Shown here: positions 1-5,850 of the stretch, in pieces
How the letters are laid out: each line of letters starts with the position of its first letter
How positions within the stretch are numbered: position 1 is the stretch's first letter
NCBI RefSeq assembly: GCF_006345805.1
Contig: NW_021829535.1
Location: forward strand, 1 to 6,010
DNA from: Octopus sinensis
Lineage: Eukaryota
Reading direction: 5' to 3'
DNA length: 6,010 nucleotides
The notes under the pieces: model-generated
What the model was told of the DNA's origin: nothing
The model's database searches: none
The model's input: only the letters and a program-made list of their open reading frames with translations
Translations under genes and position numbers: made by a program

Positions 1-538
1 TAATTTAACTCACAAAAGTTTGGGGGTAATGACATCGAAAAATCACATGCTAAGGTATTCGAGAACGTACGTTTCAAGATTAGTCAAAACAACATTTCTA
101 TCATCGGCTCGGAAATTCCTTGTTTGGATTTGGAAATACTGAAAATAAGAACATACCTCTCGAAGATCTGCTCCCAACTAACAGTGTCAACAAATTCAAA
201 ATAAGCAAGCGAAGAATCTCTGTTCTCCCCTTTCCACCAGCGTGGGTTAACATCATCAAACTCTATGCTTATTTCGGTAAAGTCCGAAGCATTAATCAGA
301 GGGATTAATTATAATTTCAACAATTGAGGGGGCAAAATTAATTAATTATAATCATTTCACCAAGTGTTCAGTATGCAAAGGGACCATTCAAGGCGAATTC
401 AAATTATTACATTATATAAAGGGCTTAGTAAAATAAATACTTTGCCGCATACTGAACTCATTAGAAATAGCAGCTAAAAAACTTTTTTAAGGCTATTTCT
501 AATACTTAAAGAAATCTCTCTCATATATAGTGTTTGCA
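1..538 (+). repeat. Unit copy F1 (full, arbitrary phase)
   Basis: Aligns with 539-901 over its first ~360 bp and with the reverse complement of 1014-1557 over its full length. Confidence 0.95.
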
Positions 539-901
539 TAATTTAACTCACAAAAGTTTGGGGGTAATGACATCGAAAAATCAAATGCTAAGGTTATTCG
601 AGAACGTACGTTTCAAGATTAGTCAAAACAACATTTCTATCATCGGCTCGGAAATTCCTTGGTTTGGATTTGGAAATACTGAAAATAAGAACATACCCTC
701 TCGAAGATCTGCTCCCAACTAACAGTGTCAACAAATTCAAAATAAGCAAGCGAAGAATCTCTGTTCTCCCCTTTCCACCAGCGTGGGTTAACATCATCAA
801 ACTCTATGCTTATTTCGGTAAAGTCCGAAGCATTAATCAGAGGGAGATTAATTATAATTTCAACAATTGAGGGCAAAATTAATTAATTATTAATCAATTT
901 C
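539..901 (+). repeat. Unit copy F2 (partial, truncated at the inversion junction)
   Basis: Matches F1 up to ...TAATCAATTTC, then the sequence switches strand instead of continuing with ACCAAGTG. Confidence 0.95.
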
Positions 902-1777
902 CGAGCCGATGATAGAAATGTGTTTTGACTAATCTTGAAACGTACGTTCTCGAATAACCTTAGCATTTGATTTTTCGATGTCATTACCCCCAAACTTTTG
1001 TTGAGTTAAATTATGCAACACTATATATGAGAGAGATTTTCTTTAAGTATTAGAAATAGCCTTAAAAAAGTTTTTTAGCTGCTATTTCTAATGAGTTCAG
1101 TATGCGGCAAAGTAATTTATTTTACTAAGCCCTTTTATATAATGTAATATTTGAATTCGCCTTGAATGGTCCCTTTGCATACTGAACACTTGGTGAAATT
1201 GATTAATAATTAATTAATTTTGCCCTCAATTGTTGAAATTATAATTAATCTCCCTCTGATTAATGCTTCGGACTTTACCGAAATAAGCATAGAGTTTGAT
1301 GATGTTAACCCACGCTGGTGGAAAGGGGAGAACAGAGATTCTTCGCTTGCTTATTTTGAATTTGTTGACACTGTTAGTTGGGAGCAGATCTTCGAGTGGG
1401 TATGTTCTTATTTTCAGTATTTCCAAATCCAAACCAAGGAATTTCCGAGCCGATGATAGAAATGTTGTTTTGACTAATCTTGAAACGTACGTTCTCGAAT
1501 AACCTTAGCATTTGATTTTTCGATGTCATTACCCCCAAACTTTTGTGAGTTAAATTATGCAAACACTATATATGAGAGAGATTTTCTTTAAGTATTAGAA
1601 ATAGCCTTAAAAAAGTTTTTTAGCTGCTATTTCTAATGAGTTCAGTATGCGGCAAAGTAATTTATTTACAAGCCCTTTTATATAATGTAATAATTTGAAT
1701 TCGCTTGAATGGTCCCTTTGCATACTGAACACTTGGTGAAATTGATTAATAATTAATTAATTTTGCCTCAATTGTTG

Positions 1778-1785
<8 letters not shown>
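896..1785 (-). repeat. Inverted unit copies R1 (896-1013, partial), R2 (1014-1557, full), R3 (1558-1785, partial, ends in a (TA)n tract)
   Basis: Reverse complement of the F copies; 896-901 AATTTC is the reverse complement of GAAATT at 651-656; the last matching bases GTTGAAATTATA end at 1785. Confidence 0.95.
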
Positions 1786-1841
<56 letters not shown>

Positions 1842-1894
1842 TGTATGTATGTATGTATGTATGTATATATATATTGTATGTGTATATATATATA

Positions 1895-1945
<51 letters not shown>

Positions 1946-1968
1946 TGTGTGTGTGTGTGTGTGTGTAT
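1782..1968. repeat. Compound microsatellite (TA)n-(TATG)n-(TA)n-(TG)n
   Basis: Directly visible: TA ~1782-1813, TATG ~1812-1865, interrupted TA to ~1936, TG ~1945-1966. Confidence 0.98.
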
Positions 1969-2319
1969 ACATGTTATATGTATTTATGAGAATTTTTTTG
2001 CGTAATGAGATAAAAGGCTGTGAATTTTAGAATATCTATAAATAGAAGGTCTTACAGCGCTTTCCAGGATATTTTTTAATTATATCCCTTCATCGGAGAC
2101 GGTGCGAGAGGATAGTTAAAGTAATAGCTAATTTAGATAGGATAAAAAATAGAGAGTGAGGTGGAGGAAAGAAAATAGATGCAAGATATGCAGGGATATT
2201 GAATTTGTAGATCCATTATTTAGGCAGAATAGTATATATGTAAGATTCCAATACCTTATGAGTAAAATCCAACATTATTTAAAATTGGTCATTCCAGGTA
2301 TAGACTCTATACACAGTGC

Positions 2320-2391
2320 ATACATATATATGTATATATATATATGTGCGTGTGTGTATGTGAGTGTGTATATCTATATATGCGTATGTAT
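2320..2391. repeat. Degenerate TA/TG low-complexity tract
   Basis: Alternating TA/TG dinucleotides directly upstream of SINE A copy 1. Confidence 0.85.
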
Positions 2392-2607
2392 AGAAACCTT
2401 AGCACGCTGGGCGAAATGCGTAGCCGTATTTCGTCTGCCGTTACATTGTGAGTTCAAATTCCGCCGAGCTCGACTTTGCCTTTCATCCTTTCGGGGTCGA
2501 TAAATTGAATACCAGTTGCGCACTGGGGTCGATATAATCGACTTAATCCCCTTGTCTGTCCTTGTTTGTCCCCTCTGTGTTTAGCCCCTTGTGGGTAATA
2601 AAGAAAC
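2392..2607 (+). mobile_element. tRNA-derived SINE family A, slightly 5'-truncated copy, tail type 1
   Basis: Aligns with 4572-4790; B-box-like GAGTTCAAATTCC at 2450-2462; shared core GACTTTGCCTTTCATCCTTTCGGGGTCGATAAA and tail TGTCTGTCCTTGTTTGTCCCCTCTGTGTTTAGCCCCTTGTGGGTA. The core resembles, from memory, the conserved central domain of octopus SINEs and Sauria/Meta-type SINEs; family name unverified. Confidence 0.88.
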
Positions 2608-2915: not shown

Positions 2916-2959
2916 CATGCTATAGCTTCGAAGTTACTTACGTCACAGTATACAAACAC

Positions 2960-3363
2960 GTGTAGGAGTGGCTGTGTGGTAAGTAGCTTGCTTCCCAACC
3001 ACATGGTTCCGGGTTCAGTCCCACTGCGTGGCATCTTGGGCAAGTGTCTTCTGCTATAGCCCCGGGCCGACCAATGCCTTGTGAGTGGATTTGGTAGACG
3101 GAAACTGAAAGAAGCCTGTCGTGTATATGTGTATATGTGTATGTGTGTGTGTCTGTGTTTGTCCCCCTAGCATTGCTTGACAACCGATGCTGGTGTGTTT
3201 ACGTCCCCGTTACTTAGCGGTTCGGCAAAAGAGACCGATAGAATAAGTACTGGGCTTACAAAGAATAAGTCCCGGGGGCGATTTGCCCGACTAAAGGCGG
3301 TGCTCCAGCATGGCCGCAGTCAAATGACTGAAACAAGTAAAAGAGTAAAGGAGTAAAAGAGTA
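2960..3363 (+). mobile_element. tRNA-derived SINE family B (CORE-SINE-like), apparently full length, with internal TG tract and 8-bp tandem tail
   Basis: A-box-like TGGCTGTGTGGT 2969-2980, B-box-like GGTTCAGTCCC 3012-3022, then CTTGGGCAAGT resembling the MIR/CORE motif; internal (TG/TA) tract ~3121-3160; 3' end AGTAAAAG-AGTAAAGG-AGTAAAAG-AGTA (3336-3363), typical of retroposon tails. Confidence 0.85.
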
Positions 3364-3439
3364 TAAGCACGCACGCGCGAACCTGTGCACACCCACACCC
3401 GTATACACGCGAATGATACTCCATGCATACACACAAACA

Positions 3440-3540
3440 CTCCTTCTCTTTCTCGTTTTCTCACATTCACTAACTCTCTCTCTCTCTGTTTTTCTGTCTC
3501 CCTCTCTCTCTTCCCGTCTCCGTCTCCTTCCTCTCATCCC
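3440..3540. repeat. Polypyrimidine (CT-rich) tract
   Basis: Nearly G-free and A-poor CT/TC-rich stretch. Confidence 0.85.
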
Positions 3541-3569
3541 ATACAAACAGGAGCTTGACCGCACTCAAA

Positions 3570-3981
3570 CATACACACACACTCACGCACACACATACAT
3601 CACTTTCAACAACTTACACATACTCGTATTCATACACACACACACACACACACACACATCAATTTCAACAGCTTACACATACTCGTATTCACACAACACA
3701 CACACTGGCACACACGCACACACTCACACAGACAGCCATACACACAGCCACACACACACACAGCCATACACACACACATACATCACTTTCAACAGCTTAC
3801 ACATACTCGTATTCACACACACACACACACGCGCACACAGATACACTCACACACAACCACACACACACACATACACGCACACACACACACACGCAAGCGC
3901 GTGCTTGTACTCCCTGTTTGTCTCTCTCCTCCTACGTATGTCACATATACATATACTCAGACATACACTCCTTCACCTACC

Positions 3982-4019
<38 letters not shown>

Positions 4020-4025
4020 TACACA

Positions 4026-4066
<41 letters not shown>

Positions 4067-4140
4067 ACACACACACCGACACACCTACATGCATATAAAC
4101 ACGCACTCTTGCCGTCCTGCACACACGCACACTTACATAC
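3570..4140. repeat. Long degenerate (CA)n region containing three copies of a 35-bp motif
   Basis: CA/CATA runs throughout; CATCA[C/A]TTTCAACA[A/G]CTTACACATACTCGTATTCA at 3598-3632, 3657-3691 and 3781-3815. Confidence 0.95.
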
Positions 4141-4143
4141 AAC

Positions 4144-4168
4144 CTCCGACTCCCCCTTTCTCTCATTG

Positions 4169-4212
<44 letters not shown>

Positions 4213-4295
4213 CCTCACTCTCTTTACCTTCCTCTCTCACTCTCTCCTGCTTTCTCCATCCTTCTCTCTTTCTCCCTTTCACCTTTTTCCACACA
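4144..4295. repeat. Polypyrimidine tract with a pure (TC)n core at 4179-4207
   Basis: Directly visible; followed by (TA)n at ~4319-4338. Confidence 0.93.
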
Positions 4296-4557: not shown

Positions 4558-5256
4558 GGCGGTGAGCTGGCCGAATTGTTAGCACGCCAGGCGAAATACT
4601 TTGCGGTAGTATTTCGTCTGCCGCTGCGTTCTGAGTTCAAATTCTGCCGAGGTCGACTTTGCCTTTCATCCTTTCGGGCTCAATAAATTAAGTACCGGTA
4701 ATCACTGGGTTCGATGTAATCGACTTAATCCGTTTGTCTGTCCTTGTTTGTCCTCTCTGTGTTTAGGCCCTTGTGGGTAGTAAAGAAATAGGTATTTCGC
4801 CTGCCGCTACGTTCTGAGTTCAAATTCCGCCGAGGTCGACTTAACCTTTCATCCTTTCGGAGTCGATTAAATAAGTACCAGTTACGCACTGGGGTCGATG
4901 TAATTGACTTAATCGTTTGTCTGTCCTTGTTTGTCCCCTCTATGTTTAGCCCCTTGTAGCTAAACATAGAGGGTCGATTAAATAAGTACCAACTACGCAC
5001 TGGGGTCGATATAATCGATTTAATCCGTTTGTCTGTCCTTGTTTGTCCTCTCTGTGTTTAGCCCCTTGTGTGTAGGAAAGAAATAGGTATTTCATTTGCC
5101 GCTACGTTCTGAGTTCAAATTCCACCGAGGTCGACTCTGCATTTCATCCTTTCGAGGTGGCTAAATTAAGTACCAGTTGCGTACTGGGACCCATCTAAAT
5201 GACTGGCCCTCTCCCCCAAAATGTCGGGCCTTGTGCCTAGAATAGAAAAGAGTATT
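4558..5256 (+). mobile_element. Composite SINE family A: head+body+tail1 (4558-4790), headless body+tail1 (4791-4957), short inverted insert (4959-4973), partial body+tail1 (4971-5085), headless body+tail2 (5086-5256)
   Basis: Head GGCGGTGAGCTGGCCGAATTGTTAGC with A-box-like 4568-4578; B-box-like motifs at 4633, 4816 and 5111; junction AAAGAAATA|GGTATTTC at 4790/4791 and 5085/5086; last unit has a different 3' tail (GACTGGCCCTCTCCCCCAAAATGTCGGGCCTTGTGCCTAGAATAGAAAAGAG). Confidence 0.88.
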
Positions 5257-5263
5257 ATATTAA

Positions 5264-5430
5264 GGCAACGAGCTGGCAGAATCGTTAGCACCTTGGACGA
5301 AATGCTTAGCGGTACTTCACCAGTCGCTACGAGGTCGACTTTGCCTTTCTTCCTTTCGGGGTCGATAAAATAAGTACCAGTTGAACACTGGTACTGATGT
5401 GATTGATTTGTTCTCTTCCCTCAAAGCTGC
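5264..5430 (+). mobile_element. SINE family A, more diverged copy with the B box deleted
   Basis: Head GGCAACGAGCTGGCAGAATCGTTAGC; GCTACG|AGGTCGAC at 5331/5332 lacks TTCTGAGTTCAAATTCCGCCG (21 nt) found in the sibling at 4812-4832; core CTTTGCCTTTCTTCCTTTCGGGGTCGATAAAATAAGTACCAG retained. 3' boundary approximate. Confidence 0.85.
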
Positions 5431-5481
5431 TGTCCTTGAGGAAACTTTTAAAGGCATTAAATCATATCATATTGAACGGGA

Positions 5482-5484
<3 letters not shown>

Positions 5485-5565
<81 letters not shown>
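5485..5565. repeat. Perfect (AGT)27 trinucleotide microsatellite
   Basis: 81 bp uninterrupted, followed by GGTTGTAGTAG. Confidence 0.98.
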
Positions 5566-5568
<3 letters not shown>

Positions 5569-5621
5569 TGTAGTAGAGGAATGTTCATTGCAAAAAATAG
5601 AGGTACACGTCTGAATGCAGA

Positions 5622-5850
5622 GTATGTACGCATGTATGTATTTATGTATGCATGTATGTGTGTATGTATTTATGTATGCATGTATGTATGTATGTATGTA
5701 TGTATGTATGTATGTATGCGTATATTTATGTGTATGTAACTATGTAAGCATGTACGTTTGTATGTTTGTATGTATGTTTGTATGTTTGTATGTATGTTTG
5801 TATGTTTGTATGTATATTTGTATGCATGTATATATGTATGCATGCATATA
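5622..5850. repeat. Degenerate (TATG)n tetranucleotide microsatellite with TTTG/CATG variants
   Basis: Directly visible 4-bp periodicity. Confidence 0.95.

What the first reader, a model, noticed from the sequence alone, without database searches (positions are those of the whole stretch)
539..1557. Tandem array flips orientation at a 6-bp microhomology, making a large interrupted palindrome
Seen: the forward unit reads ...TAATC-AATTTC-ACCAAG and the reverse unit reads ...AAGG-AATTTC-CGAGCC; the junction reads TAATC-AATTTC-CGAGCC (896-901), so the strand switch lies inside a shared AATTTC whose partner is GAAATT at 651-656. Arms can pair in two registers: 1-656 with 896-1557 (239-bp spacer) or 310-901 with 1195-1785 (~293-bp spacer). 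Established: this geometry is the signature of fold-back template switching (FoSTeS/MMBIR, inverted-repeat amplification, breakage-fusion-bridge) and also of phi29/MDA or long-read chimeras. Inference: either a real satellite polarity switch, potentially unstable, or an artefact.
Basis: partly seen in the sequence, partly recalled or inferred. Interest (0 to 1): 0.72.

Follow-up and report, generated by a model that had tools for sequence, protein, structure and literature searches.

The report
Head-to-head retroelement insertion in (TA)n
The orientation flip is real, but it is not a one-off fold-back or an artefact: it is the joint between two converging arms of a mobile 546-bp repeat that inserts into (TA)n microsatellites all over this genome, a build already described for Penelope-like retroelements.

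Summary
A ~546-bp unit runs forward over 1-901, shares AATTTC at 896-901, then runs in reverse to 1785 and ends on a (TA)n tract. The window is a whole 6-kb unplaced contig of a 2.72-Gb animal assembly.

The same unit occurs about 1,600 times on all large scaffolds. All 25 orientation switches seen are forward-then-reverse; none is the opposite. Each junction read in detail is private, with more microhomology than chance gives. Each arm starts next to (TA)n at one of two TA-palindromic unit sites (ATTATAAT or TTATATAA) and runs inward in one sense: 1,467 ends against 1 at the first site. In short loci the arms are not copies of each other. All 12 two-armed loci with both ends read carry one start site of each kind. 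One-armed, truncated copies also exist.

This suite is the published signature of Penelope-like element (PLE) insertions: tandem plus inverted 5'-truncated copies, an extension at one end, a (TA)n target, and cleavage and priming on both strands. PLEs are abundant here and some are intact.

The RNA template and the PLE enzyme are inferred; no autonomous partner was linked. Verdict: a new member of a known kind, of moderate-low interest.

The parts
1..901 (+). Forward arm: unit copy 1 (1-538, many 1-bp indels, low-quality contig end) and truncated copy 2 (539-901, unit positions 1-363). Its outer start is cut off by the contig end.
896..901 (.). AATTTC, the 6-bp microhomology shared by the inner ends of both arms (head-to-head joint).
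   Evidence: The junction 20-mer is unique in the 2.7-Gb assembly.
651..656 (+). GAAATT, the complement of the junction hexamer inside the forward arm. It marks the unit position (112-117) at which the reverse arm begins.
896..1785 (-). Reverse arm: unit positions 118 to 1 (896-1013), one full unit (1014-1557), then 546 down to 315 (1558-1785). Read on the window's + strand, this is the inferred sense of the template RNA.
1775..1785 (-). Outer end of the reverse arm, ...GTTGAAATTATA, inside the palindromic ATTATAAT site of the unit. This is the inferred start site of synthesis. Identical ends are found at 1,467 places in the genome.
1782..1975 (.). (TA)n / (TATG)n / (TG)n microsatellite abutting the arm: the inferred target tract and primer.
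   Evidence: The same (TA)n abutment is seen at every resolved outer end in other loci.
1135..1142 (-). Internal copy of the alternative start site TTATATAA (also at 412 and 1678). In other loci, arms begin here (unit position about 416).
460..503 (.). 44-bp near-perfect palindrome inside each unit (also 1049-1092 and 1594-1637). Two other loci end or switch strand inside it.
   Evidence: D19; L003 ends at unit position 492; L037 joint 493|470.

Best explanation
The flip is the inner joint of a two-armed insertion of a non-autonomous, ORF-less retroelement with a 546-bp period.

Proposed mechanism:
1. A (TA)n microsatellite is cut on both strands.
2. Each 3' end primes synthesis on a single-stranded template of one sense, most likely RNA.
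3. Priming occurs at one of two internal TA-palindromic sites, ATTATAAT or TTATATAA.
4. Each nascent strand runs for a variable distance, from about 12 nt to more than 7 kb, going round the 546-nt unit repeatedly.
5. The two converging strands are joined at a few bases of microhomology, here AATTTC.

This is the complex tandem/inverted insertion described for Penelope-like elements (PLEs). The enzyme is therefore most likely a PLE RT/GIY-YIG protein acting in trans.

Shown: the architecture, the polarity, the two start sites, the private joints, the independence of the arms, and the abundance of PLEs in this genome.
Inferred: that the template is RNA, that the enzyme is a PLE protein, and how repeated units arise (multimeric transcript, circular template or template jumping).
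For: - Family size: the unit marker occurs 834 times forward and 799 times reverse across all large scaffolds.
- Order of arms: 25 forward-then-reverse switches and 0 reverse-then-forward.
- Polarity at the first start site: (TA)n followed by TATAATTTCAAC... gives 1,467 hits. The opposite direction from the same palindromic site gives 1 hit.
- Second start site: 144 against 25.
- Joints: all 13 two-armed loci mapped (the window included) have different junctions, and so do the two further ones in L037 and L038. One has templated inserts. Mean microhomology is 2.67 against 0.67 expected, and 9 of 12 have at least 2 bp (p about 8e-6).
- Arm independence: in L032, L033 and L035 each arm holds unit segments absent from the other.
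- Start-site pairing: 12 of 12 two-armed loci with both ends read have one end at about unit position 315 and the other at about 416. This is a ~100-nt extension at one side only.
- One-armed copies have a fixed start end and a random far end.
- A diverged subfamily has the same build.
- Literature: PLE insertions show heavy 5' truncation, partial tandems, an adjacent inverted 5'-truncated copy, a tail at one end, and a (TA)n bias. The Naiad clade lacks hammerhead ribozymes and is present in Octopus (PMC8557442). A purified PLE protein cleaves and extends both strands and starts reverse transcription at two adjacent internal RNA sites that delimit the tail (PMC11167929).
- This genome has 4,846 GIY-YIG candidates. 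It also has an intact 781-aa RT-GIY-YIG frame flanked by (TA)n.
Against: - No autonomous partner sharing sequence with the unit was found. The one PLE examined shows no similarity.
- No ribozyme was found in the unit, even at E up to 10.
- No clear target-site duplication and no empty site could be shown.
- The extension between start sites is about 100 nt, against 30-40 bp reported for PLEs.
- Here the start sites resemble the (TA)n primer, whereas the anole PLE starts at a site not homologous to the cut DNA (PMC11167929).
- The window's private variant, fixed in all three units that hold that position, has no source locus in the assembly. A simple multimeric-transcript model does not predict this.
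- No RNA data were available.
Confidence: 0.72

Rival explanations
1. Insertion from a single-stranded DNA intermediate. Examples are Helitron-like rolling-circle transposition, or rolling-circle copies of a monomeric satellite circle captured at broken (TA)n tracts.
For: This would give polarity, a fixed start end and variable far ends. It would also give many identical units per locus. Substitutions are either fixed in all units of a locus or singletons, and the window variant 254A>C is in 3 of 3 units and nowhere else in the genome. Helitrons target AT dinucleotides.
Against: The ends lack the Helitron termini (5' TC and 3' CTRR with a hairpin). Two alternative start sites 100 nt apart, both TA palindromes, look like primer annealing rather than site-specific nicking. 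The whole suite, including a partner arm from the other start site in 12 of 12 loci, is what is published for PLEs. Double-stranded circles would give both polarities.
Confidence: 0.1
2. A local fold-back inverted duplication of a pre-existing tandem array (FoSTeS/MMBIR, hairpin-primed synthesis, breakage-fusion-bridge).
For: There is a 6-bp microhomology, and the arms are near-identical (389 of 390) and share private variants.
Against: The order of arms is the same at 25 of 25 loci. The reverse arm ends at the canonical start site against (TA)n instead of mirroring the left flank. In sister loci the arms hold segments that the other arm lacks, so neither was copied from the other. Flanks are not mirrored.
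Confidence: 0.05
3. A chimeric read or assembly artefact confined to this small contig.
For: The contig is 6,010 bp, unplaced, and has many 1-bp indels near its start. The junction 20-mer and the far flank occur nowhere else, so no second copy supports it.
Against: A missed-adapter palindrome would be symmetric about its centre. Here the arms are offset by about 240-300 nt. The structure obeys every rule of the family: correct arm order, a start-site end on (TA)n, and a microhomology joint. The same build sits inside chromosome-scale scaffolds with distinct flanks.
Confidence: 0.05
4. A Foldback-type DNA transposon (like FB or Tetris) whose long terminal inverted repeats are built of tandem subrepeats.
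For: The element has long inverted arms made of tandem units, variable arm lengths, AT-rich targets, and arms of one element more alike than arms of different elements.
Against: Cut-and-paste copies would share their internal structure, but every joint is private. The two outer ends are never the same site (12 of 12 have one of each kind). Many copies have one arm with a random truncated end. No target-site duplication and no transposase frame were seen.
Confidence: 0.04

Closest known systems
Complex tandem/inverted insertions of Penelope-like elements (Penelope/Poseidon, Neptune, Naiad; PMC8557442, PMC11167929)
   Same: Heavy truncation at the far end. Head-to-tail repeats. An adjacent inverted truncated copy placed head-to-head. 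An extension at one end that is delimited by two start sites. A (TA)n or AT-rich target. No hammerhead ribozyme, as in Naiads. PLEs are present and abundant in the host genome.
   Different: The element has no RT/EN frame and is only 546 bp per unit. It makes up to 14 or more full units. The extension is about 100 nt, not 30-40. The start sites look complementary to the (TA)n primer. No partner has been identified.
Non-LTR (animal) retrozymes and non-autonomous Chlamys elements such as MRC1 (PMC7229834; bioRxiv 10.64898/2026.07.22.740005; PMC8557442)
   Same: Short non-coding units found as dispersed tandem arrays. They are thought to be mobilised in trans by PLEs, possibly through rolling-circle copying. 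They give multicopy head-to-tail insertions.
   Different: Retrozymes are defined by a hammerhead ribozyme, and none was found here. The unit is larger than the 170-400 nt typical of them.
Twin priming (5' inversion) of LINE-1 insertions (established knowledge, Ostertag and Kazazian 2001; not read here)
   Same: Two target 3' ends prime on one RNA sense. The two cDNAs are joined at microhomology. The arm order is fixed relative to the element sense.
   Different: In L1 the second primer anneals at arbitrary internal sites, and only a minority of insertions are inverted. There are no tandem units and the tail is poly(A).
Foldback transposons (FB of Drosophila, Tetris; PMC4079207)
   Same: Inverted arms composed of tandem repeats, which can seed satellite DNA.
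   Different: See the rival explanation above: private joints, unlike ends, one-armed truncated copies, and no transposase.

Membership tests
PLE-type insertion (product of PLE RT/GIY-YIG machinery) | High degree of truncation at the end far from the start of reverse transcription | tested here: met
   Arms range from about 12 nt and 50 nt to 14 or more units. There are 1,467 start-type ends against about 1,633 copies of an internal marker.
PLE-type insertion (product of PLE RT/GIY-YIG machinery) | Partial or multiple head-to-tail tandems (pseudo-LTR build) | tested here: met
   Seamless head-to-tail units in every longer arm.
PLE-type insertion (product of PLE RT/GIY-YIG machinery) | Inverted truncated copy directly adjacent, head-to-head | tested here: met
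   25 of 25 switches have the same order. 15 joints were read.
PLE-type insertion (product of PLE RT/GIY-YIG machinery) | Tail: an optional extension at one end, equal to the stretch between two adjacent RT start sites | tested here: met
   The two start sites are at unit positions of about 315 and about 416. All 12 two-armed loci with both ends read have one of each. The length is about 100 nt, longer than the published 30-40 bp.
PLE-type insertion (product of PLE RT/GIY-YIG machinery) | AT-rich or microsatellite target, (TA)n for Naiads | tested here: met
   All resolved start ends abut (TA)n.
PLE-type insertion (product of PLE RT/GIY-YIG machinery) | Autonomous RT + GIY-YIG element in the same genome that shares the region needed in cis | tested here: inconclusive
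   PLEs are abundant and some are intact. However, 30 GIY-YIG loci and one intact copy share no sequence with the unit. A full search was not possible.
PLE-type insertion (product of PLE RT/GIY-YIG machinery) | RNA intermediate | not testable with these tools
   No transcript data. Only the single-strandedness of the template is inferred, from the 1,467:1 polarity at a palindromic site.
Retrozyme (non-LTR, animal) | Hammerhead ribozyme in each unit | tested here: not met
   No Rfam family at the gathering score or at E up to 10.
Foldback DNA transposon | Identical terminal inverted repeats and an internal structure inherited by copies | tested here: not met
   The two ends are of unlike kinds in 12 of 12 loci. 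Every joint is private.
Helitron | 5' TC and 3' CTRR termini with a subterminal hairpin, inserted between A and T | tested here: not met
   Ends read TATAATTTCAAC... or TATATAAAAGGG... The far ends are random.

The most novel reading that the evidence does not exclude
The arrays may be copied from a unit-length template, either a ribozyme-less circular RNA or one RNA reused by template jumping, rather than from multimeric transcripts. If so, the family would be a hammerhead-free, retrozyme-like element. The argument is that substitutions are fixed in every unit of both arms of a locus yet are absent elsewhere in the genome. In addition, the strict rule that each two-armed insertion uses one start site of each kind would reveal an unknown, coordinated step of PLE integration by a dimeric enzyme. 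This family would then be a natural set of over 1,000 events for working out that step.
Probability: 0.2. Interest if true: 0.6.

Novelty: new member of a known kind. Interest (0 to 1): 0.35.

Why it matters
Large inverted repeats in assemblies are often read as fold-back rearrangements, as sources of instability, or as chimeric reads. Here the flip is instead the regular product of a retroelement integration mechanism. It should therefore be annotated as a mobile element, not as a structural variant or an error.

For people who study Penelope-like elements, the steps after first-strand synthesis are untested (PMC11167929). This very young, short, ORF-less family offers many independent events with readable starts, joints and arm lengths. 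They include two regularities that bear on mechanism: one start site of each kind per insertion, and private variants fixed across all units.

It also shows how a retroelement can seed dispersed satellite-like arrays next to microsatellites.

Tried and rejected
- Retrozyme or ribozyme idea: Rfam found nothing at the gathering score or at E up to 10.
- tRNA or SINE origin of the unit: ARAGORN found nothing.
- Coding capacity: the longest stop-free frame is 92 aa. An 80-aa minus-strand frame has no Pfam hit. It gave only a weak match to a bacterial repeat protein that looks like a discoidin-type domain (my reading of the sequence; E 4.7e-7, 33% identity). I judged this match irrelevant.
- Haplotig idea: the window's end flank is unique, so the contig is not a duplicate of a placed locus.
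- Empty site: the flank of an insertion on another unplaced contig has no second copy.
- Target-site duplication: none is convincing at C4:115.95M. An 8-mer shared by both flanks of L032, and similar interrupted (TA)n motifs on both sides of L002, are suggestive but not decisive.
- Partner search: 30 GIY-YIG loci lack the unit's start-site motif. One intact PLE shows no similarity. The supplement of PMC8557442 is not held.
- Species identity was not confirmed by any tool. The size, the 30 large scaffolds and the repeats recall an octopus assembly (my own knowledge). A literature search did not settle it.

Full report
**What is in the window.**
- The window is the whole of contig C6006 (6,010 bp) of a 2.72-Gb assembly with 13,516 contigs and about 30 chromosome-size scaffolds.
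- A unit of about 546 bp, whose canonical form was taken from other loci, runs forward over 1-901. The first copy is 1-538 and the second is 539-901, truncated at unit position 363.
- The reverse arm runs over 896-1785. It goes from unit position 118 down to 1, then through one full unit, then from 546 down to 315.
- The two arms overlap in AATTTC at 896-901, and its complement GAAATT lies at 651-656.
- Arms 512-901 and 1195-1584 match at 389 of 390 positions.
- The reverse arm stops at ...GTTGAAATTATA and passes straight into (TA)n, (TATG)n and (TG)n up to about 1975.

**It is a family, not a single event.**
- The unit gives 303 or more scored matches on many scaffolds at 96-97% identity; most of the difference is 1-bp indels.
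- A 27-mer marker from the unit occurs 834 times forward and 799 times reverse.
- Twelve other loci, and twelve further ones in the first 100 rows, hold both orientations. With the window, that makes 25 switches that are all forward-then-reverse and none the other way. Reverse complementing does not interconvert these two orders, so this is a real polarity.
- The window's junction 20-mer is unique in the assembly.
- The contig's far flank is also unique, so the contig is not a second copy of a placed locus.

**Anatomy across loci.** I read or mapped about 25 loci.
- Outer ends. Every arm begins next to (TA)n at one of two sites of the unit, both of which are TA palindromes.
  - One site is ATTATAAT; arms then begin TATAATTTCAAC..., at unit position about 315.
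  - The other is TTATATAA; arms then begin TATATAAAAGGGC..., at unit position about 407-424.
  - From either site the arm runs inward in the same sense.
- Inner ends differ at every locus. Written as forward end | reverse start in unit positions:

| Locus | Forward end \| reverse start | Note |
|---|---|---|
| Window | 363\|118 | 6-bp microhomology |
| C11586 | 223\|32 | |
| C8:43.2M | 105\|96 | |
| C20 | 173\|187 | |
| C10 | 450\|186 | |
| C19 | 432\|32 | |
| C10046 | 543\|284 | |
| C3:75.2M | 454\|171 | two short templated inserts |
| C3:139.7M | 105\|102 | |
| C2:93.4M | 199\|60 | |
| C2:169.3M | 138\|136 | |
| C3:164.1M | 92\|190 | |
| C12 | about 325\|382 | forward arm only about 12 nt long |

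- Microhomology averages 2.67 bp against 0.67 expected for random joining. Nine of 12 simple joints have at least 2 bp (p about 8e-6).
- Arms differ in length, for example 2,854 against 830 bp at C3:75.2M.
- In short loci the arms are not copies of each other. In L032 the reverse arm holds unit positions 315-415, which the forward arm lacks altogether, and L035 is similar.
- Flanks beyond the (TA)n are unique and not mirrored.
- One-armed copies exist.
  - C4:115.95M has 14 or more units, with a random end at unit position 433 in unique DNA and a start-type end on (TA)33.
  - Others are C4:113.1M, C2:12.8M and C1:10.09M, and a 50-bp fragment.
- A diverged subfamily keeps the same build.

**Polarity test.** Both start sites are palindromes. 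A (TA)n 3' end could therefore anneal to either strand of a duplex template and extend either way.
- Genome-wide, (TA)n followed by the unit in the observed direction from the first site occurs 1,467 times (699 forward, 768 reverse). The opposite direction occurs once.
- At the second site the counts are 144 against 25, for one strict form of the boundary. The 25 are best read as far-end joints made by TA microhomology, as in L027.
- The template was therefore available in one sense only: it was single-stranded, or the process is otherwise strand-specific.

**Within-locus uniformity.**
- Substitutions relative to the canonical unit are either fixed in all units of both arms of a locus or seen in one unit only. 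The sole exception is 243G>T at C4:115.95M, which is in 2 of 7 units.
- Fixed examples are the window's 139C>T and 254A>C (3 of 3), C10046's 190T>C (7 of 7), and C4:115.95M's 160C>T and 468T>C.
- The 24-mer carrying the window's 254C occurs only in the window.
- All units of a locus thus descend from one unit-length sequence.
- Possible causes are a circular or reused unit-length template, a homogeneous source locus missing from this haploid assembly, or later homogenisation. I could not decide among these.

**Start-site pairing.**
- In all 12 two-armed loci where both ends were read, one arm starts at about unit position 315 and the other at about 416.
- If the two kinds were chosen independently and equally often, this would have a probability of about 2e-4.
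- The extra ~100 nt therefore appears on one side only.

**Comparison with what is known.**
- Craig et al. 2021 (PMC8557442) describe PLE insertions as follows.
  - They are highly 5'-truncated and often in partial tandems.
  - They often have an inverted 5'-truncated copy immediately adjacent.
  - They have a tail extension, often present at only one end.
  - (TA)n is a preferred target of the Naiad clade, which lacks hammerhead ribozymes and occurs in Octopus species.
  - Non-autonomous relatives make multicopy head-to-tail insertions.
- Frangieh et al. 2024 (PMC11167929) found these properties for a purified PLE protein.
  - It cleaves and extends both DNA strands, unlike R2 and L1.
  - It prefers AT-rich DNA.
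  - It starts reverse transcription at two adjacent internal RNA sites whose spacing equals the tail.
  - Their model has it acting on transcripts holding several element copies.
- Every structural feature found here matches this description.
- The host genome has 4,846 first-look GIY-YIG candidates, 147 of them scored above the Pfam cut-off.
- One copy has an intact 781-aa RT plus C-terminal GIY-YIG frame bounded by (TA)n on both sides.
- Beside it lies an unrelated family of ~535-bp period with the same forward-then-reverse build in (TA)n.

**What is not shown.**
- I found no PLE that shares sequence with the unit.
- I found no ribozyme, no coding capacity, no clear target-site duplication and no empty site.
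- The RNA nature of the template and the identity of the enzyme rest on the match of features to the literature.
- A single-stranded DNA route remains possible. It would account for the uniform units, but not for the rest of the suite.

**Rivals for the window itself.**
- A local fold-back of an existing array would not be expected to end at the family's canonical start site on (TA)n, nor to show a fixed arm order across loci.
- A missed-adapter or amplification chimera would be symmetric about its centre or lack the family's rules. Here the centre is offset by about 240-300 nt and all the rules are obeyed.
- A Foldback-type DNA transposon would transmit its joint to its copies and have like ends. 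Here joints are private and the two ends are of unlike kinds.
- Without reads, an artefact in this one contig cannot be excluded. I rate it at about 5%.

**Verdict.** The feature is a PLE-type tandem/inverted insertion of a new non-autonomous family: a known kind of structure, with a few mechanistically useful regularities.

Noticed in passing
window 1975-2335: A second interspersed element of about 350 bp lies directly after the microsatellite. It has 64 matches at 80-95% identity. Several are forward-then-reverse pairs (C20:28.01M, C18:30.43M, C8:18.41M). Others have a short partial tandem of its last ~80 bp. This is the same PLE-like build in an unrelated family.
   Followed up: partly
L070:5763-6867 (C6:12.735M): An unrelated family of ~535-bp period sits in (TA)n, with two arms 99% complementary and a private joint. 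It lies next to an intact PLE copy.
   Followed up: partly
L070:1720-4065 (C6:12.73M): A 781-aa stop-free frame with RT and C-terminal GIY-YIG motifs, bounded by (TA)n on both sides. Many copies score identically, which suggests a very young PLE family.
   Followed up: partly
12 two-armed loci (e.g. L011+L031, L007, L012, L032-L035, L037, L038): Each insertion has one arm starting at ATTATAAT and the other at TTATATAA, never two of the same kind (12 of 12). I know of no published statement of such a rule.
   Followed up: partly
window 240-263, 781-804, 1292-1315: The private substitution 254A>C is present in all three units of both arms that hold the position, and nowhere else in the assembly. 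139C>T is likewise fixed locally. No source locus is known.
   Followed up: partly
window 460-503, 1049-1092, 1594-1637: A 44-bp near-perfect palindrome lies in each unit. One locus ends inside it (L003, unit position 492) and one switches strand inside it (L037, 493|470). It may be a pause site.
   Followed up: no
window 2395-2600, 2950-3330, 4560-5450: Short interspersed repeats are present, including a partly tandem set of 183-bp period at 4609-4957. ARAGORN and Rfam call no tRNA. In this genome one such repeat borders TA- or TGTA-rich microsatellite at one end.
   Followed up: no
window 1214-1450 (+ strand): A 79-aa stop-free frame in the inferred RNA sense gives a phmmer match (E 4.7e-7, 33% identity over about 50 residues) to a bacterial protein made of repeats that look like discoidin-type domains (my reading of the sequence). 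There is no Pfam support, so it is probably chance.
   Followed up: yes
window 3430-4290, 5485-5576, 5622-5844: The window has a very high microsatellite load: (CA)n, (TC)n, (AGT)30 and (GTAT)n.
   Followed up: no
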